Positions 5,071 through 33,250 of a stretch of DNA of 64,000 bases are shown here, in pieces (positions within the stretch are counted from its first letter, which is position 1; the number at the start of each line of letters is the position of its first letter). The stretch covers positions 410,246-474,245 of the forward strand of contig NIVC01000455.1 of the NCBI GenBank assembly GCA_002269645.1, given 5' to 3'. Made by a program: the position numbers and the translations under genes. The stretch is from Macrostomum lignano (lineage: Eukaryota). The notes beneath the pieces are model-generated. The model saw nothing but the letters and a program-made list of their open reading frames with translations, ran no database searches and was not told where the DNA came from.

Positions 5071-5574
5071 ATGGCTGAATTGTTGGGGGTGTTAGGTTGT
5101 TGGGCGATTGTCAGATAGTCAGGTAGTACGGCTGAAGTAGCTCATGTAATTCAGATAGTGAAATAGTACACACAAGTGATGCTGATTTCTGCTAATAGGA
5201 AATACCAGCGCATTTATTTAAGGTTTCATTCTTTGATTTAGGCTAATTAAGAGAGAGGGTCTAAGGCCGTCAATCATTTGCATATTTGCTGCGGATAAGA
5301 ATATGCCCCGGCCAGCGACGATATGCACTAAGAGTTTGTGCTTGAAAGGATCAGCACTATTTGCTGATTGAGAAAGGGTTTTGGGCTGATGAAGGAAACT
5401 ATGGCTGATGAAAGTTCTGATTCATGGCGATTTATTTTTGCTAAAATGAGAAAAGGTAATTTTTGAATAATGGAAATCAACATTTTGGATAATTATAGTA
5501 AGGTTACTCTTGGGTCAAAATAAAAACCAATTGGTTTCATTTTATGGCTCCCCAGCGGGGGGCTAAATGGCTAG

Positions 5575-8500: not shown

Positions 8501-8694
8501 GGCTTTTGGGCTGATGAAGGAAACTTTGGCTGGTTAAGGTTTTGATTCATAGCAATTTATTTTTGCCAAAAATGAGAAAAAGTAAGTTTTGACTAATGGA
8601 TTTTGAATAATAAGTAAGGTTTTTACTCATAGGCCAAAATAAAAACCATTTGGCGTCATTCTTGCGTCCCCCAACGGGGGGCTTAAATTGCTAG
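5575..8694 (+). mobile_element. Helitron unit 2 (3120 bp)
   Basis: TC head with stubs at 5575; hairpin 8668-8681; CTAG 8691-8694. Confidence 0.85.
6349..6680 (+). repeat. 22-bp minisatellite, same unit (~14 copies)
   Basis: GGTGAA(G/C)CATTGCTAAACTGCT tandem copies; ~4 more copies at 12299-12390. Confidence 0.95.
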
Positions 8695-13732: not shown

Positions 13733-16337
13733 TCTTATATACTAAATCTCTAATCTATGTCTGTCTGTCTGTCCGTGTAAAACGCTCTACAGACTGTAAT
13801 TCTTGACCAATTTCGATCGCGTTTTCACCAAAAAATTGCAACTCAGCCAAGGATTGTATGGTTAACATTTCTTTTATCTGCTTCAATTCTAAAGGTCTTA
13901 AATATTAAAAAAACTGTATTTTCCCTATCTAATTAGTGTATTTTTCTCGCAGTGAGAGCTCGAAAAAAAGAATAAGTCTATGGCCATAGACTAAACTTTA
14001 ATTTCTTGAGCTGATGCTACGAGCTATAAATAATTAAATATTCGCAAGCTTCAGTTTATGCACGTGGGAGATGAAAATATATTAAATTAATTTTCATTTA
14101 TTTGTAGCTTGTGCCTGCCTGGACTAATCGCTAAAATGCAGACGATGCAAAATCTTCGTTGCATTGATGTGCAAAAGACTGCCAATATCTATCGAAAATT
14201 GATTATATAATGAGCCGTACAATGCTGAGTAAATTTCTACATTATTGAAAGCATCACTGTAGCTTCCTGAGAATACTGAGGGGCCAGCAAAGAGGAAAAC
14301 TGCAGACTGCTGAGAATGAGAATTGTTGTAGACTGCAAATGGAATGACCGCAGGTTGCTGAGGAGAACTGCAGATTGTCAAAGGGATCATTCATTTAGAC
14401 TGCAAAGTTGAAAAACGAAAAACTGCTGAGGTAGTTCCTCCAGACTTATGAGTGTATAGCTGCAAACTTCCGGGATAACTATCTATAGAGTTTAAGTGGA
14501 TAATAACTGTGAATGATTGAGTGCAACTTGTTGAGGGGATAACTGCAGACTGCTTAGTGAAGGTTTTGATTCATGGTAAGTGGGGGAATTGCTGAGATGA
14601 CAAGGCTTACTGGGGCAATCGCTGAGATGTCAAGGCTTACTTTGGGGAATTGCTGAGATGTCAAGGCTTACTGGGGAGAATTGCTGCGACTTCAAGGCTA
14701 ATTGGGGGAATTGCTGAGTTGTCAAGGCTTACTGGGGGAATTCTGAGATGTCAAGGCTAACTGGGGGAATTACTGAGATGTCAAGGCTAACTGGGGGAAT
14801 TGCTGAGATGTCAAGGCTTACTGGGGGAATCGCTGAGATGTCAAGGCTTACTTTGGGGAATTGCTGAGATGTCAAGGCTTACTGGGGGAATTGCTGCGAC
14901 TTCAAGGCTAATTGGGGGAATTGCTGAGTTGTCAAGGCTTACTGGGGGAATTCTGAGATGTCAAGGCTAACTGGGGGAATTACTGAGATGTCAAGGCTAA
15001 CTGGGGGAATTGCTGAGATGTCAAGGCTTACTGGGGAATCGCTGAGATGTCAAGGCTTACTTTGGGGAATTGCTGAGATGTCAAGGCTTACTGGGGGAAT
15101 TGCTGCGACTTCAAGGCTAATTGGGGGAATTGCTGAGTTGTCAAGGCTTACTGGGGGAATTCTGAGATGTCAAGGCTAACTGGGGGAATTACTGAGATGT
15201 CAAGGCTAACTGGGGGAATTGCTGAGATGTCAAGGCTTACTGGGGGAATCGCTGAGATGTCAAGGCTTACTTTGGGGAACTGCTGAGATGTCAAGGCTTA
15301 CTGGGGGAATTGCAGCGACTTCAAGGCTAATTGGGGGAATTGCTGAGTTGTCAAGGCTTACTGGGGGAATCGCTGAGATTTCAAGGCTTACTTTGGGGAA
15401 TTGCTGAGATGTCAAGGCTTACTGGGGGAATTGCTGCGACTTCAAGGCTAATTGGGGGAATTGCTGAGTTGTCAAGGCTTACTGGGGGGATTCTGAGATG
15501 TCAAGGCTAACTGGGGGAATTACTGAGATGTCAAGGCTAACTGGGGGAATTGCTGAGATGTCAGGGCTTACTGGGGAATTGCTGAGATGTCAAGGCTTAC
15601 TGGGGGAATTGCTGAAATGTCAACGCTTACTGGGGGGAAGTGCTGAGTTGTCAAGGCTTACTGGGGGAATTGCTGAGATTTCAAGGCTTACTCGGGGAAT
15701 TGCTGAGATTTCAAGGCTTGCTGGGGGAATTGCTGAAATGTCAAGGCTTACTGGGAGGAATTGCTGAGATGTCAAGGCTTAATGGGGTAATTGCTGCTAT
15801 GTCAAGGCTTACTGGGCTAGGAGAATTGTGTAGATGCCAAGGCTCGACTTCGCGTTGCTGCGATGTCAAGGCTTATTGGGGGAATTGCTGCGATATCAAG
15901 GCTTACTGGGGGAATTGCTGCGATGTCAAGGCTTACTGGGGGAATTGGTGAGATGTCAAGGCCTACTAAGGGAATTTCTGAGATGTCAAGGCTTACTGGG
16001 GGAATTGCTGAGATGTCATCAAGGCTTATGGCATATTGAGCTCCTGCTGCGGACCAGAATATGCCCAGCCCAATGACGATTTGCACTAAGAGTTTGTGCT
16101 TGAAAGGATAAGTACTATTTGCTGAATGAGAAAGGCTTTTGGGCTGATGAAGGAAACTTTGGCTGGTGAAGGTTTTGATTCGAATGGCAATTTATTTTTG
16201 CCAAAAATGAGAAAAAGTATTTTTAGATTAATGGAAATCAACATTTTGAATAATTAGTAAGGTAGTTACTCATAGGCCAAAATAAAAACCACTTGGCGTC
16301 ATTCTTGCGCCCCCCAACGGGGGGCTTGAATTGCTAG
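13733..16337 (+). mobile_element. Helitron unit 5 (2605 bp)
   Basis: TCTTATATACTAAA head at 13733; CTAG 16334-16337. Confidence 0.85.
14575..16020 (+). repeat. 30-bp minisatellite block (~48 copies)
   Basis: Continuous tandem copies with recurring variant order. Confidence 0.95.
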
Positions 16338-19300
16338 TCTTCTAATATACTAAAAGTCCTTCTAAATATACTAAACTCTAATATTATATACTAAATCTCT
16401 AATCTATGTCTGTCTGTCTGTCCGTGTAAAACGCTCTACAGACTGCAATTCTTGACCAATTTTGATCGCGTTTTCACCAAAAAGTTGCAACTCAACCAAG
16501 GATTGTATGGTTAAAATTTCTTTAATATGCTGCAATTCTATATTTCTTATATACTAAATCTCTAATCTATGTCTGTCTGTCTGTCCGTGTAAAACGCTCT
16601 ACAGACTGCAATTCTTGACCAATTTTGATCGCGTTTTCACCAAAAAGTTGCAACTCAACCAAGGATTGTATGGTTAAAATTTCTTTAATATGCTGCAATT
16701 CTAAAGGTCCTAAATATTCAAAAAACTGTATTTTACCTATCTAATTAGTGTATTTTTCTCGCAGTGAGAGCTCGAAAAATAATAATACGTCTATGGCCAT
16801 AGACTTAAATTTCATTTCTTGAGCTGATGCTACGAGCTATAAATAATTAAATTATTCGCAAGCTTCAGCGTATGCACGTGGGAGATAAAAATATATTAAA
16901 TTAATTTTCATTTATTTGTAGCTTGTGCCTGGACTAATCGAACATTTTTTGATTAAAAGCAACAATTTTTTATGAGTAATAATTAGCTAATTAGTAATAA
17001 TTAGCTTCGACTATCAGTTATCCCATCAATTGTTATTGCCTAAGGTCTAAGAAATCGCTAAAATGCAGACAATGTTGCTAAACTGCTGAAAGTATTGCTA
17101 AAAGCTGTGTTGTGCAAAAGATTGCAAAGTTGAAAAACGAAAAACTGCTGAGGTAGTTCCTCCAGACTTATAAGTGTATAGCTGCAAACTGCCGATGGGA
17201 TAACTATCTACAGAGTTTTAGTGGATAATAACTGTGAATGATTAATTGCAAGTTTATTGAGGGGATAACTGTATTCTGCTTGTAGTTTGCTGATGTTAAT
17301 GAAAGTTGTAGACGGCAAAGTGGATATCTGCAGGCTGTTAATAGTATGACTGCATTCTGTTTTGCGGGATTAGAAGAGAAGCTACAAGCTACAAGAATTA
17401 CTGAATTACTGTAGACAAGCAATAACAGGCATAGGCTAAGCAGATGGTCGGCAGTTGGAGTCTACATTGAAGCAGCAAATTTATCTGGCTTACTGGGGGA
17501 ATTGTTGAGATGTCAAGGCTTACTGGGGAAATTAATGAGATGTCATCAAGGCTTATGGCATATTGAGCTCCTGCTGCAGACCAGAATACGCCCAGGCCAA
17601 TGACGATATGCCCTAAGAGTTTGTGCTTGAAAGGATAAGTACTATTTGCTGAATGAGAAAGGGTTTTGGGCTGATGAATGAAACTTTGGCTGGTGAAGGT
17701 TTTGATTCATGGCAACTGGGGGAATTGTTGAGTTGTCAAGGCTTACTGGGGGAATTGCTGAATTGTCAAGGTTTACTGGGGGAATTGCTGAGATGTCAAG
17801 GCTTACTTGGGGAAATCGCTGAGACTTCAAGGCTTACTGGGGGAATTTCTGAGATTTCAAGGCTTACTCGGGGAATTGCTGAGATTTCAAGGCTTGCTGG
17901 GGGGAATTGCTGAGATGTCAAGGCTTGCTGGGGGGAATTGCTGAGATGTCAAGGCTTACTAGGAGGAATTGCTGAGATGTCAAGGCTTACTGGGGGAATT
18001 GCTTAGACTTCAAGACTTACTGGAGGAATTACTGAGATTCGAGACTTACTGGGGAATTACTGAGATTCGAGACTTACTGGAAGAATTACTGAGATTCGAG
18101 ACTTACTGGGGAATTGCTGAATTGTCAAGGTTTACTGGGGGAATTGCTGAGATGTCAAGGCTTACTGGGGAAATTTATGAGATGTCATCAAGGCTTATGG
18201 CATATTGAGCTCCTGCTGCGGACCAGAATATGCCCAGGCCAATGACGATATGCCCAAAGAGTTTGTGCTTGAAAGGATAAGTACTATTTGCTGATTGAGA
18301 AAGGGTTTTGGAAGGGTTTTGAAGGAAACTTTGGCTGGTGAAGGTTTTGATTTATGGCAACTGGGGGAATTGCTGAGACTTCAAGGCTTACTGGGGGAAT
18401 TGCTAATATTTCAAGGCTTACTAATGGGATTTCTGAGATTTCAAGGCTTACTCGGGGAATTGCTGAGATGTCAAGGCTTACTGGGGGAATTGCTGAGATG
18501 TCAAGGCTTACTGGGGGAATTGCTGAGATGTCATCAAGGCTTATGGCATATTGAGCTCCTGCTGCAGACCAGAATACGCCCAGGCCAATGACGATATGCA
18601 CTAAGAGTTTGTGCTTGAAAGGATAAGTACTATTTGCTGAATGAGAAAGGGTTTTGGGCTGATGAATGAAACTTTGGCTGGTGAAGGTTTTGATTCATGG
18701 CAACTGGGGGAATTGTTGAGTTGTCAAGGCTTACTGGGGGAATTGCTGAATTGTCAAGGTTTACTGGGGGAATTGCTGAGATGTCAAGGCTTACTTGGGG
18801 AAATCGCTGAGACTTCAAGGCTTACTGGGGGAATTTCTGAGATTTCAAGGCTTACTCGGGGAATTGCTGAGATTTCAAGGCTTGCTGGGGGGAATTGCTG
18901 AGATGTCAAGGCTTGCTGGGGGAATTGCTGAGATGTCAAGGCTTACTAGGAGGAATTGCTGAGATGTCAAGGCTTACTGGGGGAATTGCTTAGACTTCAA
19001 GACTTACTGGAGGAATTACTGAGATTCGAGACTTACTGGGGAATTACTGAGATTCGAGACTTACTGGAAGAATTACTGAGATTCGAGACTTACTGGGGAA
19101 TTGCTGAATTGTCAAGGTTTACTGGGGGAATTGCTGAGATGTCAAGGCTTACTGGGGAAATTAATGAGATGTCATCAAGGCTTATGGCATATTGAGCTCC
19201 TGCTGCGGACCAGAATATGCCCAGGCCAATGACGATATGCCCAAAGAGTTTGTGCTTGAAAGGATAAGTACTATTTGCTGATTGAGAAAGGGTTTTGGAA

Positions 19301-22165
19301 GGGTTTTGAAGGAAACTTTGGCTGGTGAAGGTTTTGATTTATGGCAACTGGGGGAATTGCTGAGTTGTCAAGGATTACTGGGGGAATCGCTGAGATTCCA
19401 AGGCTTACTGGGGGAATTGCTGAGACTTCAAGGCTTACTGGGGGAATTGCTAATATTTCAAGGCTTACTAATGGGATTTCTGAGATTTCAAGGCTTACTC
19501 GGGGAATTGCTGAGATGTCAAGGCTTACTGGGGGAATTGCTGAGATGTCAAGGCTTACTAGGGGAATTGCTGAGATGTCATCAAGGCTTATGGCATATTG
19601 AGCTCCTGCTGCAGACCAGAATACGCCCAGGCCAATGACGATATGCACTAAGAGTTTGTGCTTGAAAGGATAAGTACTATTTGCTGAATGAGAAAGGGTT
19701 TTGGGCTGATGAAGGAAACTTTGGCTGATGAAGGTTTTGATTCATGGCAACTGGGGGAATTGTTGAGTTGTCAAGGCTTACTGGGGGAATTGCTGAATTG
19801 TCAAGGTTTACTGGGGGAATTGCTGAGATGTCAAGGCTTACTTGGGGAAATCGCTGAGACTTCAAGGCTTACTGGGGGAATTTCTGAGATTTCAAGGCTT
19901 ACTCGGGGAATTGCTGAGATTTCAAGGCTTGCTGGGGGAATTGCTGAGATGTCAAGGCTTGCTGGGGGAATTGCTGAGATGTCAAGGCTTACTGGGGAAT
20001 TGCTGAGATGTCAAGGCTTACTGGGGGAATTGCTTAGACTTCAAGACTTACTGGAGGAATTACTGAGATTCGAGACTTACTGGGGAATTACTGAGATTCG
20101 AGACTTACTGGAAGAATTACTGAGATTCGAGACTTACTGGGGAATTGCTGAATTGTCAAGGTTTACTGGGGGAATTGCTGAGATGTCAAGGCTTACTGGG
20201 GAAATTAATGAGATGTCATCAAGGCTTATGGCATATTGAGCTCCTGCTGCGGACCAGAATATGCCCAGGCCAATGACGATATGCCCAAAGAGTTTGTGCT
20301 TGAAAGGATAAGTACTATTTGCTGATTGAGAAAGGGTTTTGGAAGGGTTTTGAAGGAAACTTTGGCTGGTGAAGGTTTTGATTTATGGCAACTGGGGGAA
20401 TTGCTGAGTTGTCAAGGATTACTGGGGGAATCGCTGAGATTCCAAGGCTTACTGGGGGAATTGCTGAGACTTCAAGGCTTACTGGGGGAATTGCTAATAT
20501 TTCAAGGCTTACTAATGGGATTTCTGAGATTTCAAGGCTTACTCGGGGAATTGCTGAGATGTCAAGGCTTACTGGGGGAATTGCTGAGATGTCAAGGCTT
20601 ACTGGGGGAATTGCTGAGATGTCATCAAGGCTTATGGCATATTGAGCTCCTGCTGCAGACCAGAATACGCCCAGGCCAATGACGATATGCACTAAGAGTT
20701 TGTGCTTGAAAGGATAAGTACTATTTGCTGAATGAGAAAGGGTTTTGGGCTGATGAAGGAAACTTTGGCTGATGAAGGTTTTGATTCATGGCAACTGGGG
20801 GAATTGTTGAGTTGTCAAGGCTTACTGGGGGAATTGCTGAATTGTCAAGGTTTACTGGGGGAATTGCTGAGATGTCAAGGCTTACTTGGGGAAATCGCTG
20901 AGACTTCAAGGCTTACTGGGGGAATTTCTGAGATTTCAAGGCTTACTCGGGGAATTGCTGAGATTTCAAGGCTTGCTGGGGGGAATTGCTGAGATGTCAA
21001 GGCTTGCTGGGGGAATTGCTGAGATGTCAAGGCTTACTGGGGGAATTGCTGAGATGTCAAGGCTTACTGGGGGAATTGCTTAGACTTCAAGACTTACTGG
21101 AGGAATTACTGAGATTCGAGACTTACTGGGGAATTACTGAGATTCGAGACTTACTGGAAGAATTACTGAGATTCGAGACTTACTGGGGAATTGCTGAATT
21201 GTCAAGGTTTACTGGGGAATTGCTGAGATGTCAAGGCTTACTGGGGAAATTAATGAGATGTCATCAAGGCTTATGGCATATTGAGCTCCTGCTGCGGACC
21301 AGAATATGCCCAGGCCAATGACGATATGCCCAAAGAGTTTGTGCTTGAAAGGATAAGTACTATTTGCTGATTGAGAAAGGGTTTTGGAAGGGTTTTGAAG
21401 GAAACTTTGGCTGGTGAAGGTTTTGATTTATGGCAACTGGGGAATTGCTGAGTTGTCAAGGATTACTGGGGGAATCGCTGAGATTCCAAGGCTTACTGGG
21501 GGAATTGCTGAGACTTCAAGGCTTACTGGGGGAATTGCTAATATTTCAAGGCTTACTAATGGGATTTCTGAGATTTCAAGGCTTACTCGGGGAATTGCTG
21601 AGATGTCAAGGCTTACTGGGGGAATTGCTGAGATGTCAAGGCTTACTTGGGGGAATTGCTGAGTTGTCAAGGCCTACTAAGGGAATTTCTGAGATGTCAT
21701 GGCTTACTGGGGAAATTAATGAGATGTCATCAAGGCTTATGGCATATTGAGCTCCTGGTGTGGACCAGAATACGCCCAGGCCAATGACGATATGCACTAA
21801 GAGTTTGTGCTTGAAAGGATAAGTACTATTTGCTGAATGAGAAAGGCTTTTGGGCTGATGAAGGAAACTTTGGCTGGTGAAGGTTTTGATTCATGGCAAC
21901 TGGAAGAATTGTTGAGTTGTCAAGGCCTACTGGGGGAATTGTTGAATTGTCAAGGCTTATTTGGGGGAATTGCTGGGATGTCAAGGCTTGGGGAGAATTG
22001 CTGAGTTGTTAAGGCTTATTTGGGGGAATTGCTGAGATGTCAAGGCTTACTGGGGGAATCACTGAGATGTCAAGGCTTACTGGGGGTAAGGTTATTACTC
22101 ATAGGCCAAAATAAAAACCATTTGGCGTCATTCTTGCGTCCCCAACGGGGGGCTTAAATTGCTAG
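16338..22165 (+). mobile_element. Helitron unit 6 (5828 bp, head restarts at 16545, contains a higher-order repeat)
   Basis: TC head at 16338 and a second head at 16545; CTAG 22162-22165. Confidence 0.85.
17470..22085 (+). repeat. Higher-order repeat: 30-mer blocks separated by a ~170-bp spacer, long/short monomers forming a ~1.0-1.1 kb dimer
   Basis: Spacer start TCATCAAGGCTTATGGCATATTGAGC at 17543, 18185, 18531, 19172, 19578, 20216, 20622, 21261 and 21727; intervals alternate ~640 and ~346-466. Confidence 0.9.
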
Positions 22166-23767
22166 TCTAAATATACTAAATCTTATTCTATCTTCTAAAT
22201 ATACTAATTCTCTAAGGTTTGTATGCTTGTCCATAACGCTCTACAGATTGCAATTCTTCACCGATTTTCATCGCGTTTTCGCCAAAAGATTCAAAATTGT
22301 CTGGAAAGAAGACAGTTAAAATTTCTTGTATCTGCTTCAATGCTAAAGGGATTAAATATTCGAAAAACTGTTTTAAATGGCCTTTTTCAATGCAAATTTT
22401 ATCAGCGAGAAACTTCACAGTCAATTTTAATTGATTGCGCCAGAGCCAACTGATAAGAAAACTCACTGGGCCCCACTTAAAGGGGGGGGGGCAATAAAAA
22501 TTATTCTGGCTGCTGGCAGCCAGCTCTAATTAGCTAGTCTAAATATACTAAATCTCTAAGGTTTGTATGTTTGTCCATAACGCTCTAGAGAGAGCAATTC
22601 TTCACCGATTTTGATCGCGTTTTCGCCAAAAGATTTGTAATCAGCCTGGGATTGTATGGTTAAAATTCCTTGTATCTGCTTCAATGCTTAAGGGATTAAA
22701 TATTCGAAAAACTGTTTTAAATGACCTTTTTCAATGCAAATTTTATCAGCGAGAAACTTCACAGTCAATTTTAATTGATTGCGCCAGAGCCAACTGATAA
22801 GAAAACTCACTGGGCCCCACTTAAAGGGGGGGGGCAATAAAAATTATTCTGGATGCTGGCAGCCAGCTCTAATTAGCTAGTAAATCTAAATATACTAAAT
22901 CTCTAAGGTTTGTTTGTTTGTATGTTTGTCCATAACGCTCTAGTCTAAATATACTAAATCTCTAAGGTTTGTATGTTTGAATGAATGTCCATAACGCTCT
23001 AGAGACTGCAATTCTTCACCGATTTTGATCGCGTTTTCGCCAAAAGATTCAAAATTGTCTGGAAAGAAGACGGTTAAAATAAATATACTAAATCTCTAAG
23101 GTTTGTATGTCCATAACGCTCTAGAGATTGCAATTCTTCACCGATTTTGATCGCGTTTTCGCCAAAAGATTCAAAATTGTCTGGAAAGAAGACAGTTAAA
23201 ATTTCTTTAATCTGCTCCAATGCTAAAGGGATTAAATATTCGAAAAACTGTTTTAAATGGCCTTTTTCAATGCAAATTTTATCAGCCAGAAACTTCACTG
23301 CCAATTTTAATTGATTGCGCCAGAGCCAACTGATAAGAAAACTCACTCCGCTCCACTTAAAGGGGGGCAATAAAAATTATTCTGGATGCTGGCAGCCAGC
23401 TCTAATTAGCTAGTCTATCTTCTAAATATACTAAATCTCTAAGGTTTGTATGCTTGAATGTCCATAACGCTCTAGAGATTGCAATTCTTCACCGATTTTC
23501 ATCGCGTTTTCGCCAAAATATTCAAAATTGTCTGGAAAGAAGACAGTTAAAATTTCTTGTATCTGCTTTAATGCTAAAGGGATTAAATATTCGAAAAACT
23601 GTTTTAAATGGCCTTTTTCAATGCAAATTTTATCAGCGAGAAACTTCACTGCCAATTTTAATTGATTGCGCCAGAGCCAACTGATAAGAAAACTCACTGG
23701 ACCCCACTTAAAGGGGGGGGGCAATAAAAATTATTCTGGATGCTGGCAGCCAGCTCTAATTAGCTAG
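22166..23767 (+). mobile_element. Cluster of short (~59-370 bp) Helitron units, most with the alternative 3' end GCTGGCAGCCAGC..CTAG
   Basis: Units 22166-22537, 22538-22880, 22885-22943 (ends at an internal CTAG), 22944-23080 (truncated), 23081-23413 and 23414-23767 share the head TCTAAATATACTAAATCTCTAAGG. Confidence 0.85.
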
Positions 23768-24219
23768 TCTATCTAATCCTATATACTAAAAATGTGATGT
23801 CTATATTCTTTTAGGGGGGGGGGGCGCCAAGGCCAGAGTTGGTGATTATGGGGGGGGCCACGGCCCCCCTTGCCCCCCCTCTGGCTACGCCCCTGTAATG
23901 CTGTAGTAGTGCTATAATGACTCTTAGAGAGAATTACTGAAATTTCAATGCTTTAGGGTTAGGGTTAGGGTTAGGGTTAGGCTAGGGTTAGGGTTAGAAG
24001 GTTGACAAATATTTTTAGATTTCCAAGGCTTATTGGGGGCATTGCTGAGATGTCAAGGGGGGGAGTTGATATGTTAAAGCTTGTGGGGGGGATAACTGAC
24101 ATGTCAAGGCTTACAAGGTTTGACAGGAGATTTTTTAAGATTTCAAGGATACATGTAGCTTATTAAAAAAACGTGTATTGCATTTCTTTGGCTCCCCAAC
24201 GGGGGGCGTAGATTGCTAG
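23768..24219 (+). mobile_element. Short Helitron unit (452 bp) carrying a TIR fragment and telomeric repeats
   Basis: Head TCCTATATACTAAAAATG after two stubs; CCCCAACGGGG hairpin; CTAG 24216-24219. Confidence 0.75.
23953..23997 (+). repeat. Interstitial telomeric repeat (TTAGGG)n, ~7.5 units
   Basis: TTAGGG x4, TTAGG, CTAGGG, TTAGGG, TTAG. Confidence 0.9.
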
Positions 24220-24375
24220 TCTAAATCTATCTTCTATCTAATCTAATCTTCTAATCTTCTTCTATCTTCTAAATCTTCTATCTAAATATACTAAATCTCT
24301 AAGGTTTGTATGCTTGAATGAATGAATGTCCATAACGCTCTAGAGACTGCAATCACAATATACTAAATCTCTAAG

Positions 24376-24407
<32 letters not shown>

Positions 24408-26727
24408 GACCGGTATTCCAGTCCACAGCCCGAATGCCTGAACCGATTTTTTTCAAACTTGCTTCATTCAATTGCAAATTCTTGTGAGATTGTGTGGGTG
24501 TAATTGCATTTAAAAAATTCGAATGGGAAGATGGTTAAATATTCGAAAAACGAGTTTTCCCTATGCTTTCAATGGGAGGCTAGAAAAGGTCAAAATCTCA
24601 CTAACTGAATTTCAATTCCAATTAAGATTGCGCCACAACTTTTCTCTGTTCACTGTGTACGCCTCAATACTGGCTGCAATAAGGGAGAGGAAAATAATGC
24701 TCAGTGGCTGCGTGTGTACATTCTGACCCTGGCTGACTGGCGGACTGCATAGACAATTGCTATTAATAGATTTCACTCAACTCTGCATTGGCTCTGCCTG
24801 CACAACTTGTGCACACTGAGCAGCCTATCACTGCTATGTATTTGACTGCTGTGCCGAAGCATATATGGCTGATTTTTGCGCCCTCCGATCAGTAGGCGGA
24901 ATAGCCGCAGTGTAGGCACTAGGACTAGGTTTAGGCTAGGCATAAGGTCCAAGGTTCGAGTCCGCCTCCCCAGCGGATACTTAAAATTAAATAAATTCAT
25001 TCATTAGTAGCTTCTGCCTCGACTATTTTGAACATTTTTTAATTAATTGTAATTAAATTTTTTTTATTAATTACAATAATTTATTTTTGCTACTCGCACA
25101 AGCCACTAAGCAAATTTGATTTGATTTGTAAAATCCTAAGATCCCATTAATTGTTATTATCTAGGTCTATAGAAGTAGATATTACTAAACTGCAGGGGAT
25201 TAAATTACTAAGCTGCAGACGATGCTGCTAAACTGCTGAGGTATTGCTAAATGCTGAGTGGTGCAAGAGATTGCCGATATGTATCGAAAATCGATTAGTG
25301 AGCCATAAAATGCTGAGCTAATTTCTACATTGTTGAAAGGATCATTGCAGTAGACGATGCTGCTAAACTGCTGAGGTATTGCTAAATGCTGAGTTGCGCA
25401 AGACTGCCTATATGTATCGAAAATTGATTAGTGCGCCGTCGTAAATGCTGAGCAAATTTTTAAATAATTGAAAAGATCATTGCAGTTTGCTGAAAATACT
25501 GAGGGGCCAGCTGAGAGAACTGCAGACTGCTGAGGGGATAAATGAGAATTATTAAGGAAACACTTGCTGACTGCAAATGAATTGACTGCAGACTACTGAG
25601 GGGAACTGCAGATTGTTGAAAGGATCATTGCAGACTGCAAAGGGGACAAACTGCAAACTGCCGAGTGGATAGCTGCAGACTGCTAGGATAATAATGGCAG
25701 ACTAGGATAATAATGGCAGACTTCTGAGGCGGATATCTAACTGTGAATAATTGTAGCTTGCAGAAGGGACAATTCTGGGTCCCTGAGGGATAAATGAATA
25801 ATAATAATAAAAGTTGTAGAGTGCAAATGAGCTGTATGACTGCAGTCTGTTTTGCGGAATTAGAAGGGATAATTTCAGGTTGTTGTGGGGATAACTCCCA
25901 ATTTCTGGGGAGGGTTTAACTTTAAACTTCTGAGGCGATAAGTAGTCACCTTTTAGCAGTTTGGGAGTGGTGCTAATCTGGGGAGCGGTGCTATCTAAGG
26001 GAGTGGGGCTAATATAAAGGAGTGGGGGGCTAATCTGGGGGATTGGGGCTAATCTGGAGGAAGTAGCGGTGCAAATTTTTGCGGAGTAGTGCAAATCTGG
26101 AGAAGTAGTGCTAATCTGGGAAGGTGAAACTATCTGGGAAGCGGCGGTAATCTGTGGAGCGGTGCTAATCTAGGCTGAGTGCTAATCTGGGCTGAGTGCT
26201 AATCTAGGCTGAGTGCTAATCTGGGCTGAGTGCTAATCTAGGCTGAGTGCTAATCTGGGCTGAGTGCTAATCTGGGCTGAGTGCTAATCTGGGCTGAGTG
26301 CTAATCTGGGCTGAGTGCTAATCTGGGCGCAGTGCTAATCTGGGTGTAGTGCTAATCTGGGGGAAGTGGGGCTAATCTGGGGGTGTGCGGCTAATATGGG
26401 GGGAGTAGTGCTAATCTGGGGGAAGTGGGGCTAATCTGGAGGTGTAGGGCTAATATGGGAGTATAGCGCTAATCTGGTGAGGATTTGAATATAACGAATA
26501 ATCATAAAAGAACTATAAATGAATTGACGTTGCAAAGTTTCAAACATTAAGAAATGTAACTTTTTAGAACTTTTTAGTCTCAGTAAAATTGGTGTACAAC
26601 TGCTTAGAGATTTGCTACTGCAGAACTTCTCGGAGATTAGTGAGATTTGCTCAGCGACTGTGCAAAACTGCTTATGGACAAGCGCTAAACTGCTAAGAAG
26701 CCACCCGGAGGGGGGCTAAATGGCTAG
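24220..26727 (+). mobile_element. Helitron unit (2508 bp) preceded by a 15-stub stack
   Basis: Full head at 24281; second head variant with (TCTG)n at ~24357; imperfect hairpin; CTAG 26724-26727. Confidence 0.8.
25965..26480 (+). repeat. 17-bp minisatellite GTGCTAATCTGGGCTGA (homogeneous core 26160-26330, degenerate flanks)
   Basis: About 10 near-perfect copies flanked by divergent G-rich GCTAATCTG copies. Confidence 0.9.
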
Positions 26728-29700
26728 TCTAAATATACTAAATCTCTAAGGTTTGTATGTCCATAACGCTCTACAGATTGCAATTCTTCACCGATTTTGA
26801 TCGCGTTTTCGCCAAAAGATTCAAAATTGTCTGGAAAGAAGACAGTTAAAATTTCTTGTATCTGCTTCAATGCTAAAGGGATTAAATATTCGAAAAACTG
26901 TTTTAAATGGGCTTTTTCAATGCAAAATTTTATCAGCGAAAAACTTCACAGCCAATTTTAATGATTGCGCCAGAGCCAACTGATAAGAAAACTCATGGGC
27001 CCCACTGCCCAGATAATTACTCTATTTAAATTGCGCAACCATACCAGGGGTCAAAAATAAAATTATTCTGGAGGCTAGCAGCGAGCTCTTTAAGCGTCAA
27101 AGATCTGTTTTTCGTAACGCTCTACAGACTGCAATTCTTGACCAATTTTGATCGCGTTTTCGCCAAAAGTTTTGTAATTATCTGGAAAGAGGACAGCTAA
27201 AATTTCTTTAATCTGCTTCAATGCTAAAGGTATTAAATATTCGAAAAACAAGTTTATCTAAATGCTTTTAATGGAAGGCCAAGCAGCGTTGAATTCTTGA
27301 CTGGCTGAATTCCAATTCTAAATGATTGCGCCACAACTGCGTACTGCATATTCTCGCTATAAACTGACTCTGAGCTTTTCAGCAGGAGGCAGTGTGCCAA
27401 GCATTGCGCAGGCACTCTGGAGGGAGAGAGAAATCAGCCAGTGCATTTTAAAAGTATTGAAATTGACAGATTTACTTAACTGTGCAATGGCTCTGCCAGC
27501 ACCAAAACTGTGCACACTGAGCAGGCTATCACTGCTATGTATTTGACTGCAGTGCCGAAGCATATATGTCTGATTTTTGCGCCCTTCCATTAGTAGGCGG
27601 AATAGCCGCAGTGTAGGCACTAGGACTAGGTTTAGGCTAGGCGTAAGGTACAAGGTTCGGGGGGCCGTAGCCCAGCGGTAGCGCAGCTGCTCTGGTGTGC
27701 CGCGACCCAGGCTCGATTCCAAGTGCAGTCACATTAATTTGGGGCTGAATTGGAATTTCGGCTTGGCTCGCTTGTGCAATTAACGGCCTTGAGAGCCAAC
27801 CCCCCAAGGCGCAGTGAAGTGTACATGCCTAACAATTGATAAAGTTAGGGCCGCTGTACACTCCTGTGTGAGTGTGTGCCTGCGTAACGTATCCGCGCGC
27901 TTGTATGCCTGCTCAGGGGAGTCGGCGGAATGGGCAGCAATGCCTCTCGCCGGTTGTGTGCCTATGTCGCCTAAAGTGCGCCAGGGTGCACACAACCCCC
28001 CTGCCTCTAATAATAAAAAAAGGTACAAGGTTCGAGTCCGCCTCCCCGGTGGATAATTAAAATAAGTAAATTCATTCATTTGTAGCTTGTGACTCGACTA
28101 AATATAACATATTTTTTATTAATTTTAATTGCAACACTTTTTATTAATTAGCAAATAATTTTTGCTACTTGGCACAAGCCACTTATTAAATTTGATTTTT
28201 AAAAACTGCTTCGTGTATTACTGATCCCATCAACGAGTACTGCCTCGCACCATGAAAGTATGAAATTGCTATTTAACTGCACACCATGCTGTTAAAATTG
28301 CTTAAAGGTATTGCTAAATTTTGAGTTTTTTAAAGAATGCCGATATGTACTGAACATTGTTTAGTGAGCCGTAAAATGCTGAGCACATTTTTAGATTATT
28401 GGAAGATTGGAAGATTATTGGCAAGGAGAACAGAAGATGCTGAGGGGAACTGCAGATTGTCAAAGGGATCATTCATGCAGACTGCAAAGGGAAAAATGGA
28501 ACAAACTGCTGAGGTAGTTCCTCCACACTTATGAGTGCATAGCAGCAAACTGTTGAGGGGATAACTATCTACAGAGTTTAAAGTGGATAATAGCTGTGAA
28601 GAATTAAGTGCAAGTTGTTGAGTGGATAACTGCGGACTGCTGAGTGAAGTATTGTAGTTTGCTGATGTTAATGAAAGTTTTAGACGGCACAGTGGATATC
28701 TGCAGGCTGCTAAGAGTATGACTGCAGTCTGTTTGTGGGATTAGAAGTGATAGCTAATTTCAGGATGTTGTGGAGATAACTGCCGATTTCAGGGGGGGGG
28801 GTTAACTTCAAACTGCCGAAGTTACTAAACTTCTTGAATAGTATAAGGCTTTTAGCAGAAGGTCGGCAGTTCGAGTCTGTATTGAAGCAGCGAATTTATC
28901 TTTGTGACAATAATCATTGTTTCCTATAAGGATTCATGCAATTTTTTGCCAAGACTCACTTATGGGTAGGTTTGGGGGCTTAGGGTCAGTTTTGGTTCAA
29001 TCATAGACTAACCACTGTCAACAATCAATTAAAGACTTGCTAAGATATCTAAGCTCATGGGGGGAATAGCTGAGTTGTCAAGGCTTATAAGGGGATTGCT
29101 GAATTCTTGGGAGAGGGGAGTTGGGCTGTTGGGATGTCAAGGCTAAATACTGCGCTGGGAGAATTGCTGCAATGTCGAGGCTTAATGGGGGAATTGCTGA
29201 GATGTCAAGTCCTACTAAGAATTGCTGAGATGTCAAGGCTTTCTGGGAATTGCTAAAATGTCAAGTCCTACTGGGAATTGCTAAGATTTCTATGCTTACT
29301 GAGATGTCAAGGCTTGCTGGGGGAATTGCTGAGATGTCAAGGCTTGCTGGGGGAATTGCTGAGATCTCAGAGCTTACTGGGGGAATGCTGAGATTTCAAG
29401 GCTTACTCGGGGAATTCCTCAGACGTCAAGGCTTACTGGGGGTATTGCTGAGATGTCAAGGCTTACTGGGGGAATTGCTGAGATCTCAAGGCTTACTTGG
29501 GGAATTTCTGAGATGTCAAGGCTTACTGGGGGAATTGCTGAGATGTCAAGGCTTACTGGGGGAATTGCTGAGATGTCAAGGCTTACTGGGGGAATTGCTG
29601 AGATGTCAAGGCATACTGGGATAATTTCTGAGATCTCAAGGCTTACTGGTGGAATGCTGTGATTTCAAGGCTTACTCGGGGAATTCCTCAGACGTCAAGG

Positions 29701-30353
29701 CTTACTGGGGGTATTGCTGAGATGTCAAGGCTTACTGGGGGAATTGCTGAGATCTCAAGGCTTACTGGGATAATTTCTGAGATCTCAAGGCTTACTGTGG
29801 AAATTGCTGAGACGTCAAGGCTCATGGACGATGCCTAAATTTTTTTGGGGGGTGTTAGGTTGTTGGGCGATTGTCAGATAGTCAGGTAGTACGGCTCAAG
29901 TAGCTCATGTAATTCAGATAATGAAAAATTACACACAAGTGATGCTGATTTCTGCTAATAGGAAATACCAGCGCATTTAATCCTTTGCGCTGGTTTGATC
30001 CTTTGATTTAGGCTAATCTAGAGAGAGGGTCTAAGGGCGTCAGGGATTTGCATATTGAGCTCCTGCTGCGGATCAGAATATGCCCCGGCCAGTGACGATA
30101 TGCATCAAGAGTTTGTGCTTGAAAGGATAAGCACTATTTGCCGATTTAGAAAGGGTTTTGAGCTGATGAACGAAACTTTTTTGGCTAATAAAATTCGGAT
30201 TGACGACAATTTATTTCTGCCAAAATGAGAAAAGGTAATTTTTGATTATTGGAAATCAAAATTTTGGATGATTATAGTGAGGTTACTCTTGTGCCAAAAT
30301 AAAAACCAATTGGTGTCATTTTCAAGGCTCCCCAGCGGGGGCTAAATGGCTAG
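26728..30353 (+). mobile_element. Short unit (26728-~27090, decayed 3' end) plus a long unit (~27091-30353) carrying a SINE
   Basis: Head at 26728; decayed GGCTAGCAGCGAGC end at ~27073-27090; CCCCAGCGGGG hairpin and CTAG 30350-30353. Confidence 0.75.
27660..28019 (+). mobile_element. tRNA-derived SINE (~360 bp) with a 15-bp TSD
   Basis: Starts GGGGCCGTAGCCCAGCGG (A box), has GGCTCGATTCC (B box) and ends TAATAATAAAAA. Flanked by exact direct repeats AAGGTACAAGGTTCG (27645-27659 and 28020-28034). Empty sites at ~1255-1275 and ~24943-24965. Confidence 0.9.
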
Positions 30354-30825
30354 TCCTATATACTAAAAATGAGTTGTCTGTATCTAGCTATGCGATAGAT
30401 TTCAGAAAAATTGTCTCAACCGATTTTCTTCAAACTTGTACCATTCAATCAGAAATTTTCCTGGGACGGTACATGCATCTTGGCTAAGAAATTGCTCAAT
30501 GTTAAAGGGATTAAATATTCGAAAAACATGCTTTTTTGCAAAGGTCAAGCAAAATTTTCGACTTGAAATGCATTGTAAGAATGCTAGAGAAAAAACTGAC
30601 TGGCTGAATTTCAATTCTGATAAAGATTGCATCACAACAAATTGAAAACAGTGTCGAAGAAATGCACACACAACTTGGTTAAAATTGCGTAACCATATTG
30701 CTAACTTGAATTGAGACTGATACTGGCTGACTGAGAAATTGATTATGTCATAACTTTTTACTCCAATTGACTTGCTGTAAGAATTGAATTATAAGGGCCA
30801 CAATTCATGTTCTCCAATTAAAAAG

Positions 30826-30904
30826 AGATAGCCTAGATGCGAACAGACTGGACTGCTAATGTAGCGACCTGGGTTCGAATCTTAGTAGCGCAAAATGATT
30901 TTTT
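30826..30904 (+). other. Degenerate tRNA-like segment (Ser-GCT-like anticodon arm)
   Basis: TAGCCTAGATG, TGGACTGCTAAT and GGGTTCGAATC, followed by a T run at ~30899. Confidence 0.45.
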
Positions 30905-30939
30905 ATTAAAACACTTTGAAAAGAAAAAATTGCTAATCA

Positions 30940-32410
30940 TAAAAGAAGCGCAATGTCAAATATAGAAGAGCCACCATGTCGAACATAAAAGAGCCACCAT
31001 GTCAAACATTAAAGAGCCACCATGTCAAATATTAAAGAGCCACCTTGTCAAACATTAAAGAGCCACCATGTCAAATATTAAAGAGCCACCATTTCAAACC
31101 TAAAAGAGCCACCAAGTCGAACATTAACAAGCCACAATGTCAAACATTATAAGGCCACCCATTTCAAACCTAAAAGAGCCACCATGTCGAACATTAAAAA
31201 GCCACCATTTTGAACATTAAAGAGCCACCATGTCAAACATTAAAGAGCCCCCATTTTGAACATTAAAGAGTCACCATGTCAAACATTAAAGAGCCACCAT
31301 GTAGAACATAAAAGAGCCACCATGTCTAATATAAAAGAGCCACCATGTCAAACATTAAAGTGCCATCGTGTCGAACATTAAAGAGCCACCATGTCAAACA
31401 TAAAGAAGCCACCATGTCAAACATAAAAGAGCCACTATGTTGAACATTAAAGAGCCACCATGTCAAACATTAAAGAGCCACCATTTTGAACATTAGAGAG
31501 TCAACATGTCAAACATTAAAAAGCCACTTTGTTGAGTATTAAAGAGCCATACTCAATCCCTGGCCAGCTACCATGCCCCCCATGTCAAACATTAAAGAGC
31601 CACTTTGTTGAATATTAAAGAGCCACTATGTCAAACATTAAAGAGCCACCATGTCAAACATTAAAGAGCCACCATGTCTAATATAAAAGAGCCACCATGT
31701 CGAACATAAAGGAGCCACTATGTCGAACATAAAAGAGCCACCATGTTGAAAATTAAAGAGCCACCCTGTAAAACATTTAAAAGATTCACCATGTCAAACA
31801 AATAAGTGACTTCATTTCAAACATAAAAGAACCATCATGTCAAACAGAAAAGAGCCACCATGTCAAACATTAAAGAGCTACCATGTCAAACATTAAAGAG
31901 CCACCATGTAAAACATTAAAGAGCCACCATGTCAAACATTAAAGAGCCATCGTGTCGAACATTAAGGAGCCACCATGTCGAACATTAAAGAGCCACCACA
32001 TCGAACATTAAAGAGCCACCATTTCAAACATAAAAGAGCCACTATGTAAAACATATATGTGACTCTATATCAAACATATACATGACTTCATGTCGAACAT
32101 TAAAGAGCCACCATGTAGAACATTAAAGAGCCACCATGTAGAACATTAAAGAGCCACCATGTCAAACATATAAGAGACTTTATTTCAAACATAAAAGAGC
32201 CACCATGTTGAGCATTAAAGAGCCACAATGTAAAACATAAAAACGACCATTTCGAACATTAAAGAGCCACCATGTTGAACATTAAAGGGCTACCATGTCA
32301 ATCATTAAAGAGCCACCATGTCAAACATTAAAGTGCCATCGTGTCGAACATTAAAGAGCTACCACGTTGAACATAAAGGAGCCACCATGTCGAACATAAA
32401 AGATACACAA
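30940..32410 (+). repeat. 23-bp minisatellite AAAGAGCCACCATGTCAAACATT (~63 copies)
   Basis: Period 23 read directly (30968, 30991, 31014, ...). Confidence 0.95.
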
Positions 32411-32499
32411 TTTCAAACGTAAAAGTGAGCGAATTTTGAAGGAGCCACTATAATGCTAAGGAAATTGTCGCACTAGCTACTTATTGTCTGGTGGATGTT

Positions 32500-32600
32500 T
32501 GCTATTTGGGGATGCTATCTATCTGGGGGATGCTTGCTATTTTGGGGATGCTTGCAATCTGGGGGATGCTTGCTATCTGGGGGATGCTTGCTGTCTTGGG
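32500..32600 (+). repeat. 18-bp minisatellite GGGGGATGCTTGCTATCT (~5 copies)
   Basis: Tandem copies near the 3' end of the unit. Confidence 0.85.
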
Positions 32601-32740
32601 ATGATTTCTTTTTGCATTGCACTTCATTTGAGTAGTTTGTCTGTTTTCTTTGTGAAAGCTTTATTTGGCTATCTTCTTATTCCTTGTAGAGAACAGAGAT
32701 TCTATACAGATGTCCCCCAACGGGGGGCGAAAATTGCTAG

Positions 32741-33250
32741 TCTTATATACTAAAGTTGAGTTTGTTTGTTTGTTTGTTTGCTTGTAACAGAAAATCTTGC
32801 GAACGGAATGACCGATTTTCTCCGTTTTTGCACCATTAGATGGCAAATTGTCCGGAATCGGTACACGTATTTTTAATAAGCTATCCAAATTAAAGAGGCC
32901 TCTCAATTGTCAGAAAACAGGTTTTTGCCCATCTCGCTAATGTATTTTTTCGGCAGTGAGAGCTTGCAAACGGTTTTGGCCATAGATTATAATGCTAATA
33001 GCTGTAGGCTGCTTGGTTTTTATGTAGCCCACTGCTGCCCACTGCTGAAAGTGTCAAATTGAAAACGGGAGGGTAACAAACGACAAAAGTGGTTTTTGCC
33101 GTAACTGTTGATTTTAAGCTTTATTTATTTGCTATTAATTAAGCGAGCAACTCTACTAAAGAATAGGAAGAGCTACGAGCGTATTAGAGAGATGCGTTTT
33201 CAAAAGAGAAATTTTGTTGAGTGCTTAGGATTTATACAACAGTAGACAGA
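32741..33250 (+). mobile_element. Last, 3'-truncated Helitron unit
   Basis: Head TCTTATATACTAAAGTTGAG(TTTG)n at 32741, similar in layout to insect Lep1-type heads. No 3' CTAG end; it runs into the RTE relic. Right boundary approximate. Confidence 0.65.

What the first reader, a model, noticed from the sequence alone, without database searches (positions are those of the whole stretch)
24220..24290. A stack of 15 perfect prefixes of the Helitron 5' end: a possible tally of rolling-circle rounds
Seen: after CTAG, the 61 nt parse completely as TCTAAA-TCTA-TCT-TCTA-TCTAA-TCTAA-TCT-TCTAA-TCT-TCT-TCTA-TCT-TCTAAA-TCT-TCTA, then the full head TCTAAATATACTAAA. Every piece is an exact 3-6 nt prefix of the head, in irregular order, so this is not a fixed-period microsatellite. 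Shorter stacks occur at 5575 (3 stubs), 8695 (3), 16338, 22166, 23414 (2) and 23768 (2); there are none at 11173, 13733, 22538, 26728, 30354 or 32741. The matching headless remainders are largely missing, which argues against simple nested insertion a few nt into a head. Established: RepHel nicks at the 5' TC and terminates at hairpin-CTAG, giving circles with a CTAG|TC junction. Inference: in tandem arrays termination overshoots 3-6 nt into the next head before ligation to a new TC, or initiation aborts and restarts. Each cycle then adds one stub, so stub number would record lineage depth.
Basis: partly seen in the sequence, partly recalled or inferred. Interest (0 to 1): 0.8.

Follow-up and report, generated by a model that had tools for sequence, protein, structure and literature searches.

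The report
Stuttered 5' ends of tandem Helitrons
At the joints of a 33-kb head-to-tail array of rolling-circle transposons (Helitrons), the first 3-6 letters of the transposon are repeated up to 15-17 times in irregular order; these look like scars of repeated cutting and failed restarts at the transposon's start site, not a clean count of copying rounds.

Summary
Window 24220-24280 parses without remainder as 15 units of TCT+A(0-3), flush between a hairpin-CTAG 3' end and a full TCTAAATATACTAAA head. It lies in a one-orientation array (about 298-33250) of about 15 non-autonomous canonical Helitrons, every junction CTAG|TC. Smaller stacks sit at five other heads. On both strands of the 64 kb, five of the six runs of three or more such units end in a Helitron head.

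The unit order is random-like. The NNTG microsatellite 25 nt further into the same heads shows ordinary slippage runs, so the stack is not an ordinary microsatellite. Stub lengths fall off as 13:9:5:2 for 3, 4, 5 and 6 nt. Longer 5' prefixes (18-157 nt) are stacked the same way, and two of them end at CTAG or CTTG.

The "tally of rolling-circle rounds" reading is not supported. Y-type units whose last 120 nt are 95-98% identical carry 0 and 17 stubs. Stubs also occur away from CTAG, and the strings do not nest as predicted.

My best reading, inferred at about 0.4, is that these are aborted RepHel cleavage-rejoining cycles at the 5' end. The stack then offers A|TC landing sites, and one unit sits in such a site.

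No related loci could be retrieved, so the mechanism remains untested.

The parts
298..33250 (+). Head-to-tail array of about 15 non-autonomous Helitron units from several subfamilies, all on the + strand. Every internal junction is CTAG|TC with no host DNA. The leftmost unit is 5'-truncated at about 298. The right end after the head at 32741 is not defined (about 33250).
24216..24219 (+). CTAG 3' terminus of the TCCT-type unit, 9 nt after a GC hairpin (CTCCCCAACGGGGGG)
24220..24280 (+). The finding: 15 stubs of TCT+A(0-3), unit lengths 6 4 3 4 5 5 3 5 3 3 4 3 6 3 4. No G, no substitutions, no predicted secondary structure.
24281..24352 (+). 72-nt 5' prefix of an A'-type unit (full head through ...GAGACTGCAA), not followed by the rest of that unit
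24353..26727 (+). 2.4-kb unit. Its head reads either as the variant TCACAATATACTAAATC (2 mismatches) or as a head lacking its first 4 nt; the parse is ambiguous. It is followed by (GTCT)8.
23768..23776 (+). Two stubs, TCTA TCTAA, after the CTAG of unit U5. They are probably the left part of the same stack, split by the next part (2+15 = 17 stubs).
23777..24219 (+). 443-bp TCCT-type Helitron unit flanked by A (end of stub TCTAA) and T (start of stub TCTAAA). This is a canonical A|T insertion into the stack. It carries (TTAGGG)~7 at 23953-23997.
5575..5586 (+). Stack TCTA TCTAA TCT, followed by a 63-nt head prefix (5587-5649) and then a full head at 5650
8695..8751 (+). TCT x3 (8695-8703), a 44-nt A-type prefix ending CTTG (8704-8747), and a TCTT stub (8748-8751) in front of the TCTT-type head at 8752
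16338..16546 (+). TCT stub, 20-nt and 24-nt head fragments (16341-16384), a 157-nt B-type 5' region (16384-16540), the 6-nt filler TATTTC, then a perfect second copy from 16547
22166..22193 (+). 18-nt head prefix, filler TAT, and stubs TCTA TCT in front of the head at 22194 (unit U1)
22881..22943 (+). Non-prefix TAAA, then a 59-nt mini-unit running from the head to a cryptic internal CTAG, directly followed by a full head at 22944
23414..23420 (+). Stubs TCTA TCT in front of the head at 23421 (unit U5, 96% identical to U1, which has the same two stubs)

Best explanation
The tract is a pile of exact 3-6 nt copies of the first bases of a canonical non-autonomous Helitron. It lies exactly at the site where the RepHel transposase cuts, between the CTAG 3' end of one unit and the TC 5' end of the next. 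I propose that each stub records an aborted cycle at the left terminal sequence. RepHel nicks N|TC. A few bases of the head are copied from the free 3'-OH, or peeled off, before the enzyme escapes the terminus. The reversible cleavage-joining reaction then reseals the strand with the short copy retained, so a prefix is added next to an intact head. Less often the aborted product is longer (18-157 nt), sometimes ending at a terminator-like CTAG or CTTG, and it is laid down at a head in the same way. Stubs are then inherited with the unit. Because every stub ending in A recreates the preferred A|TC site, the stack acts as a landing pad that helps the array grow. Stub number therefore reflects how often this terminus was cut unproductively, and perhaps later gain or loss; it does not reflect the number of successful transposition rounds in a lineage. 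Shown: the anatomy, the specificity for heads, the non-microsatellite order, the length spectrum and one insertion into a stack. Inferred: that RepHel makes the nick, the order of steps, and one stub per event.
For: (1) Position. All five non-trivial runs of TCT+A(0-3) in 128 kb of both strands end flush in a Helitron head, and nulls never exceed 4 units. (2) Canonical Helitron ends at every junction: TC heads, 5-7 bp GC hairpins 8-13 nt before CTAG. The 14 hairpin-CTAG junctions and one cryptic one are exactly the RTS-LTS cleavage substrate of Helraiser (PMC5876387, PMC4778049). (3) Not slippage. The unit order shows no excess of adjacent equal units or tandem blocks (2 observed against 3.3 in shuffles). 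A duplication-driven model needs at least 2-4 A-run changes per duplication to match. The NNTG microsatellite in the same heads shows plain same-unit runs. The first stub cannot arise by slippage because CTAG gives no homology (sequence). (4) Lengths of all 29 short stubs fall monotonically, 13:9:5:2 for 3-6 nt, with none of 1-2 or 7-17 nt, and the spectrum is similar inside and outside the big stack, as expected of a short-range stochastic process starting at one fixed point. (5) A TCTT stub precedes a TCTT-type head. (6) The same architecture holds for longer prefixes. The 59-nt one ends at a cryptic CTAG and the 44-nt one at CTTG; CTTG is a documented alternative or truncated Helraiser 3' end (PMC4778049). 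(7) No substitution in 61-70 nt, although sister units differ by 4-8%, suggests recent or ongoing generation. (8) The 443-bp unit 23777-24219 has A...T flanks inside the stack.
Against: Everything rests on one window. No relative of the family could be retrieved. There are no solitary A|TC insertions, no alleles and no raw reads to test. No RepHel gene lies in the window, so current activity is unknown. Slippage with frequent A-run indels is disfavoured but not excluded. Some fillers are not prefixes (TAT at 22184, TAAA at 22881, TATTTC at 16541). Stubs at 23768 are not prefixes of the adjacent TCCT head, which needs the insertion-into-stack reading. Three long-prefix junctions restart 2-4 nt inside the head rather than at TC (16384, 23081, and 24357 under one parse), which looks more like host end-joining than precise Rep chemistry. 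The minimum of 3 nt is unexplained.
Confidence: 0.4

Rival explanations
1. In tandem arrays, rolling-circle termination overshoots CTAG by 3-6 nt into the next head before ligation to a TC. Each successful transposition cycle then adds one stub, and stub number records lineage depth.
For: Six of the 14 hairpin-CTAG junctions are directly followed by stubs. Read-through and de novo 3' ends are established for Helraiser (PMC4778049). By my own knowledge, rolling-circle plasmid initiators synthesise about 10 nt past the nick before terminating (pT181 RepC/RepC*). Stub type need not match the present downstream head (23768), which this model allows.
Against: Y-type units whose last 120 nt are 95-98% identical are followed by 0 stubs, 'TAAA' and 17 stubs; a 90-92% identical tail is followed by 2. 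Stubs also follow non-RTS sequence at 8748 and 22187. The predicted suffix nesting is not seen. Units U1 and U5 (96% identical) share TCTA TCT on their 5' side although their upstream neighbours differ (coincidence probability about 0.14). The model does not account for 18-157 nt prefixes that do not follow CTAG.
Confidence: 0.12
2. Host break repair. The CTAG|TC junction is a fragile or nicked site, possibly but not necessarily nicked by RepHel. It is repaired by end-joining with templated fill-in (staggered-break fill-in, or polymerase-theta-type iterative copy-dissociate-reanneal synthesis). One or a few repair events then lay down several short copies of the adjacent head.
For: Non-prefix fillers (TAT, TAAA, TATTTC) and junctions that restart 2-4 nt inside a head resemble end-joining products. 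Imperfect Helitron circle junctions with microhomology are reported in maize (PMC10095026), and some imprecise junctions are reported for Helraiser (PMC5876387). By my own knowledge, templated filler DNA is typical at T-DNA and polymerase-theta junctions. The random unit order also fits.
Against: Every stub starts exactly at head position 1, although there is no homology upstream (CTAG) to re-anneal on. There are no stubs copied from the left flank and no G-containing filler in 61 nt. The spectrum is identical at six independent junctions.
Confidence: 0.2
3. An ordinary compound microsatellite. A short TCTA/TCTAA repeat seeded by the head expanded by replication slippage, with later A-run length changes, unrelated to transposase action.
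For: The tract is low-complexity. TRF reports it at period 16, score 61. The same heads carry a second, clearly slippage-type microsatellite. The genome is rich in tetranucleotide arrays. Once stubs exist, slippage at TCT anchors would preserve the parse.
Against: There is no excess of adjacent identical units. Simulations need at least 2-4 A-run changes per duplication to reach 2 or fewer adjacent equal units with all four unit types present. There are no substitutions in the tract. No such tract occurs away from heads apart from (TCT)4. Seeding the first copy next to CTAG lacks homology. A TCTT stub sits before a TCTT head.
Confidence: 0.15
4. Nested insertions of family members a few nt into existing heads, each followed by recombination that removed the insert and the headless remainder, leaving only the stub.
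For: One genuine insertion into the stack exists (23777-24219). Helitrons are known to insert next to or into one another (PMC2267711, PMC4778049).
Against: The remainder after CTAG is missing at 13 of the 14 hairpin-CTAG junctions and at the cryptic one. The A|T target rule would allow only TCTAAA or TCTAAATA stubs, whereas TCT is the commonest. The model needs 15-17 insertion-plus-deletion cycles at one site.
Confidence: 0.05
5. An assembly or base-calling artefact in a low-complexity stretch.
For: A-run length errors are typical of long-read data (my own knowledge). Raw reads are not available here.
Against: The same grammar with different strings recurs at six independent junctions, and two 96%-identical units carry the same two stubs. 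Errors would not be confined to A-runs of 0-3 while sparing every TCT.
Confidence: 0.03

Closest known systems
Head-to-tail Helitron arrays with G|T (CTAG|TC) junctions: Myotis Helibat, maize, rice CentHel
   Same: Precise abutment of a CTAG 3' end to a TC 5' end, all units in one orientation, and unrelated Helitrons side by side. These are explained either by rolling-circle concatemers or by insertion at the A|T formed with the first T of a resident element (PMC2267711, PMC5876387; Xiong et al. 2016 as cited in PMC12001565 and PMC10095026).
   Different: Those reports describe precise junctions. I found no report of piles of 3-6 nt head prefixes between CTAG and the head in the papers searched.
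Premature truncation and de novo 3' ends in Helraiser transposition
   Same: The transposon strand is ended early at CTTG or other tetranucleotides when the hairpin is not used. Here a 44-nt prefix ends CTTG and a 59-nt prefix ends at a cryptic CTAG (PMC4778049).
   Different: The known truncations are hundreds of bases long and are found as dispersed insertions. Here the products are 3-157 nt and are stacked directly in front of a resident head.
Variable (TA)n footprints at maize Helitron excision sites (Li and Dooner 2009, as described in PMC10095026)
   Same: A variable number of very short repeats is left exactly at a Helitron boundary.
   Different: Those repeats derive from the host A|T target and mark an empty site. 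Here the repeats are copies of the element's own 5' end and sit next to an intact element.
Rolling-circle initiator by-products (pT181 RepC/RepC*) and irregular terminal reiterations (yeast TG1-3 telomeres; sliding-back in protein-primed replication). From my own knowledge, not tested here.
   Same: A short oligonucleotide that starts at the nick site is produced when synthesis runs a few bases past it. Repeated partial copying of one template start gives units of irregular length.
   Different: Different enzymes and replicons. No evidence here that the Rep-oligonucleotide adduct is re-integrated.
Microsatellite module of HINE/DINE-1 non-autonomous Helentrons
   Same: A hypervariable short-repeat module lies near the 5' end of a rolling-circle element that carries central tandem repeats (PMC7492417). 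The NNTG/(GTCT)n module here matches that description.
   Different: That module is internal and slippage-like, and Helentrons have subterminal inverted repeats and T|T targets. The stub stack is at the very terminus, has variable unit length, and belongs to a TC...hairpin-CTAG Helitron.

Membership tests
Canonical Helitron (HLE1), non-autonomous | 5' terminus TC | tested here: met
   All 23 ATATACTAAA cores lie on the + strand. Every unit that follows a hairpin-CTAG junction starts with TC except the one at 22877. The starts are TC[T/C][A/T]A(0-2)ATATACTAAA.
Canonical Helitron (HLE1), non-autonomous | 3' terminus CTRR (CTAG) | tested here: met
   14 units end in CTAG immediately before the next TC.
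Canonical Helitron (HLE1), non-autonomous | Short GC-rich hairpin about 10 nt upstream of the 3' end | tested here: met
   CCCC(C)AACGGGG(GG) or GCTGGCAGCCAGC stems of 5-7 bp lie 8-13 nt before CTAG. The folding z-scores of these short stems are weak on their own (-0.07 to -1.75).
Canonical Helitron (HLE1), non-autonomous | Insertion between A and T without target-site duplication | tested here: inconclusive
   Only unit 23777-24219 has A...T flanks, and it has no duplication. All other junctions are G|T inside the array. No empty sites are available.
Canonical Helitron (HLE1), non-autonomous | Mobilised by a RepHel (HUH nuclease plus PIF1-like helicase) encoded by an autonomous partner | not testable with these tools
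   No Rep or helicase domain was found in the 18 longest ORFs scanned.
Helentron / HINE (Helitron2-type) | Subterminal inverted repeats, a terminal palindrome and T|T insertion | tested here: not met
   The reverse complement of the head is absent near the 3' ends read, and no head motif was found on the minus strand within the array. The ends are TC...hairpin-N9-CTAG.
Ordinary slippage microsatellite | A fixed unit length with runs of identical units | tested here: not met
   Unit lengths of 3-6 nt in random-like order. TRF finds only period 16 at 68% match. This contrasts with the NNTG module.
   Counts of 0, 'TAAA' and 17 follow tails that are 95-98% identical, and 2 follows a 90-92% identical tail. 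No suffix nesting is seen. The sample is only 6-7 stacks, so the test is weak.
   There are no solitary copies in the window and no related loci.

The most novel reading that the evidence does not exclude
Stub stacks are written by the transposase itself. Each stub would be one unproductive RepHel cleavage-rejoining cycle (abortive initiation or overshoot) at that terminus. A Helitron 5' end would then carry a countable, heritable record of how often it has been cut. The resulting A|TC-rich stack would also nucleate further insertions and so drive growth of head-to-tail arrays.
Probability: 0.3. Interest if true: 0.75.

Novelty: new variant of a known kind. Interest (0 to 1): 0.55.

Why it matters
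How Helitrons start, stop and build tandem arrays in real genomes is known mainly from one reconstructed bat element studied in human cells. If the stubs are products of failed or overshooting cleavage-joining at the 5' end, they are a natural in-genome readout of that step. Their length spectrum would report how far the strand moves before the second cut. Their number would report how often a terminus is attacked. The A|TC sites they create would explain why Helitrons pile up head to tail. All of this can be tested directly with genome-wide junction catalogues, long reads and a tandem-donor transposition assay. If the stubs are instead host repair scars or an unusual microsatellite, the finding is a local curiosity. 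It would still matter for annotation, because stacks blur the true 5' boundary of Helitrons.

Tried and rejected
(1) Retrieving more copies. An exact-pattern scan of metagenome contigs with the 17-nt head core gave 120 loci, and the viral scan gave 19. All were chance hits in AT-rich DNA. Longer patterns in genome contigs and viral contigs found nothing.

(2) Retrieving copies through spurious ORFs. A 97-aa ORF spanning a short unit and a 183-aa minisatellite ORF found no homologues.

(3) Identifying the organism. The RT fragment at 60084-60596 has 80%-identity hits only on short, anonymous, 64%-GC metagenome contigs. Rfam found nothing. The organism remains unknown. A cnidarian-like subtelomeric setting is only a lead (PMC11934779).

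(4) Helentron/HINE membership was rejected on the termini.

(5) I checked whether the long (GTCT)n arrays at 36-48 kb are further Helitron heads. They are not.

(6) Simple nested insertion was rejected because the remainders are missing.

(7) I looked at whether the stack is split-head evidence for nick translation, reading TCTA at 24277 plus AATATAC at 24357, and TCT at 16338 plus TATATAC at 16385. This is suggestive, but the parses are ambiguous, so I do not rely on it.

(8) Literature searches for prior descriptions of 5' prefix stacks, and for the head sequence itself, found none.

Full report
WHAT IS THERE. The window's left half (about 298-33250) is a single-orientation, head-to-tail array of about 15 non-autonomous Helitron units. 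Each unit starts with TC, as TC[T/C][A/T]A(0-2)ATATACTAAA. Each ends with a 5-7 bp GC hairpin, an 8-13 nt spacer and CTAG. The head motif occurs 14 times at up to 2 mismatches against 0.18 expected. There are 23 ATATACTAAA cores, all on the + strand. Fourteen hairpin-CTAG ends abut the next unit directly, with no host DNA between them.

The units belong to several subfamilies. There are at least three head types, TCTAA-, TCTT- and TCCT-, and two unrelated hairpin types. Pairwise identities of the 3' tails range from about 0.5 to 0.98. The array is therefore not a simple amplification of one unit. No RepHel gene lies in the window.

THE OBSERVATION. It is confirmed. The tract is flanked by CTAG (24216-24219) and a full head (24281). 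The other stacks exist, with small corrections:
- The stack credited to 22166 actually starts at 22187, after an 18-nt head prefix and the filler TAT.
- The two stubs at 23768 precede a TCCT head, of which they are not prefixes beyond TC.
- A TCTT stub at 8748 in front of a TCTT-type head was missed, as was a non-prefix TAAA at 22881.

On both strands of the whole window there are six runs of three or more TCT+A(0-3) units. Five end flush in a Helitron head, and the sixth is (TCT)4 at 35734. Markov nulls give 0.8-2 such runs and never more than four units.

"Every piece is a prefix of the head" is logically the same as "only TCT and A, with A-runs of at most 3". The real content is the position, the absence of substitutions and the cap at AAA.

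IS IT A MICROSATELLITE? Probably not an ordinary one.
- TRF finds only period 16 at 68% match.
- The order of unit lengths (6 4 3 4 5 5 3 5 3 3 4 3 6 3 4) shows no excess of adjacent equal units or tandem blocks over shuffles: 2 observed against 3.3 expected, P(>=observed) = 0.9.
- A duplication-driven simulation needs at least 2-4 A-run length changes per duplication to give so few adjacent equal units with all four unit types present.
- The NNTG module about 25 nt further into the same heads (TTTG-TATG-CTTG-AATG, or (GTCT)n) shows textbook same-unit runs.
- The first stub next to CTAG has no upstream homology to slip on.
- There is no substitution in 61-70 nt, although sister units differ by 4-8%.

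WIDER ANATOMY. Across the window the 29 short stubs have lengths of 3, 4, 5 and 6 nt in the ratio 13:9:5:2. None is 1-2 or 7-17 nt long. The spectrum is alike inside and outside the big stack.

Longer 5' prefixes are stacked in front of heads in the same manner. Their lengths are 18, 20, 24, 44, 59, 63, 72, about 137 and 157 nt. The 59-nt one ends at a cryptic internal CTAG. The 44-nt one ends at CTTG, which is a documented alternative 3' end of truncated Helraiser copies (PMC4778049). Three long-prefix junctions restart 2-4 nt inside the next head, and short fillers occur (TAT, TATTTC).

The 443-bp TCCT-type unit 23777-24219 is flanked by the A of stub TCTAA and the T of stub TCTAAA. This is a canonical A|T insertion. 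The original stack was therefore probably 17 stubs (70 nt) long, and it offered eleven A|TC sites.

Units U1 (22187-22537) and U5 (23414-23767) are 96% identical and share the stubs TCTA TCT although their upstream neighbours differ. This suggests that stubs travel with the downstream unit, though coincidence has a probability of about 0.14.

The background is sound. RepHel cuts at the 5' TC and at hairpin-CTAG, and makes circles with a CTAG-TC junction (PMC4778049, PMC5876387). G|T head-to-tail junctions are known from bat and maize (PMC2267711). The specific "tally" claim fares poorly here:
- Y-type units whose last 120 nt are 95-98% identical are followed by 0 stubs, "TAAA" and 17 stubs, and a 90-92% identical tail is followed by 2.
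- Stubs also occur after sequence that is not a hairpin-CTAG end (8748, 22187).
- The predicted suffix nesting is not seen.
- A 3-6 nt overshoot does not cover the 18-157 nt prefixes.

The sample of 6-7 stacks is too small to refute the model, and its decisive tests need data I could not obtain.

BEST EXPLANATION (inferred, about 0.4). The stubs come from aborted cycles at the left terminal sequence. The sequence of events would be a nick at N|TC, copying or peeling of a few bases, then resealing that keeps the short copy. This adds one exact prefix beside an intact head. Longer aborted products, some ended at terminator-like tetranucleotides, would be deposited likewise. The model explains five things: why every stub starts at head position 1, the decaying length spectrum, the random order, the match of a TCTT stub to a TCTT head, and the restriction to Helitron 5' ends. 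The stack then acts as an A|TC landing pad.

COMPARISON AND NOVELTY. The elements pass the structural tests for canonical Helitrons and fail those for Helentrons/HINEs. The arrays, G|T junctions and truncated copies are known. The closest precedents for a "stutter" at a Helitron boundary are the variable (TA)n excision footprints in maize (described in PMC10095026) and the imprecise circle junctions (PMC5876387, PMC10095026). A random-order mosaic of repeat segments has been noted inside Paramecium Helitrons (PMC13085455). I found no description of stacks of 5'-end prefixes. I therefore rate the finding as a new variant of a known kind, of moderate interest, and limited by resting on a single window.

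LIMITS. No related loci could be retrieved. The other scans and all three protein searches gave nothing usable. The organism is unidentified.

Noticed in passing
window 23953-23997: A telomere-like block, (TTAGGG)~7 with one TTAGGC/TAGGG variant, lies inside the 443-bp TCCT-type Helitron unit, 220 nt upstream of the big stack. Together with the Helitron array this recalls the subtelomeric Helitron-like repeats of cnidarians (PMC11934779) and the telomere-targeting Helitrons of Paramecium (PMC13085455).
   Followed up: partly
window, about 25-60 nt into each A/A'/B head (e.g. 5609-5642, 22905-22929, 24304-24328, 24376-24408): A hypervariable tetranucleotide module is built from NNTG units in a conserved order (TTTG, TATG, CTTG, AATG) or from (GTCT)n. 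It varies in copy number between sister units. It is classic slippage, and it resembles the microsatellite module of HINE/DINE-1 elements.
   Followed up: partly
window 16384-16703: A perfect (100%) duplication of the first 157 nt of a TCTT-type unit, with the two copies separated by the 6-nt filler TATTTC. The first copy lacks its TC. This looks like a very recent event at a head.
   Followed up: partly
window 22885-22943 and 8704-8747: Mini-units consisting only of a head and its first bases. The 59-nt one ends at a cryptic internal CTAG and the 44-nt one ends at CTTG. Each is directly followed by a full head.
   Followed up: partly
window 17715-21739: A 4-kb array of the 30-bp minisatellite ACTGGGGGAATTGCTGAGATGTCAAGGCTT lies inside one Helitron unit, with a higher-order repeat of about 1047 bp at 99.4% identity (18360-20624 against 19407-21669). 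The same 30-mer fills most other long units. Three of its six reading frames are open, giving long spurious ORFs.
   Followed up: no
window 30953-32425: A 1.5-kb array of a 23-bp minisatellite (ATGTCAAACATTAAAGAGCCACC) inside the TCCT-type unit 30354-32740. It has strongly positive AT skew.
   Followed up: no
window 33250-51000: A GC-rich (50-60%) region with long (GTCT)n/(ACAG)n arrays (36706-37009, 44799-44992, 45327-45650, 47314-47674) and many 16-57 bp minisatellites. None is attached to a Helitron head. A PHD-finger ORF lies at 46544-47170 (-), and an RNase H/zf-RVT remnant at 35783-36481 (-).
   Followed up: partly
window 60084-60596: A non-LTR reverse-transcriptase fragment (RVT_1). Its closest relatives (up to 80% amino-acid identity) are unnamed ORFs on short, 64%-GC contigs from JGI and ENA metagenomes. 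The source organism or its relatives are therefore present in environmental data, but unnamed.
   Followed up: partly
window 1-300: The leftmost Helitron unit is 5'-truncated inside its (GCTT)n microsatellite at about 298. Upstream lie GTAAC/GTTAC-rich short inverted and direct repeats, possibly another small element.
   Followed up: no
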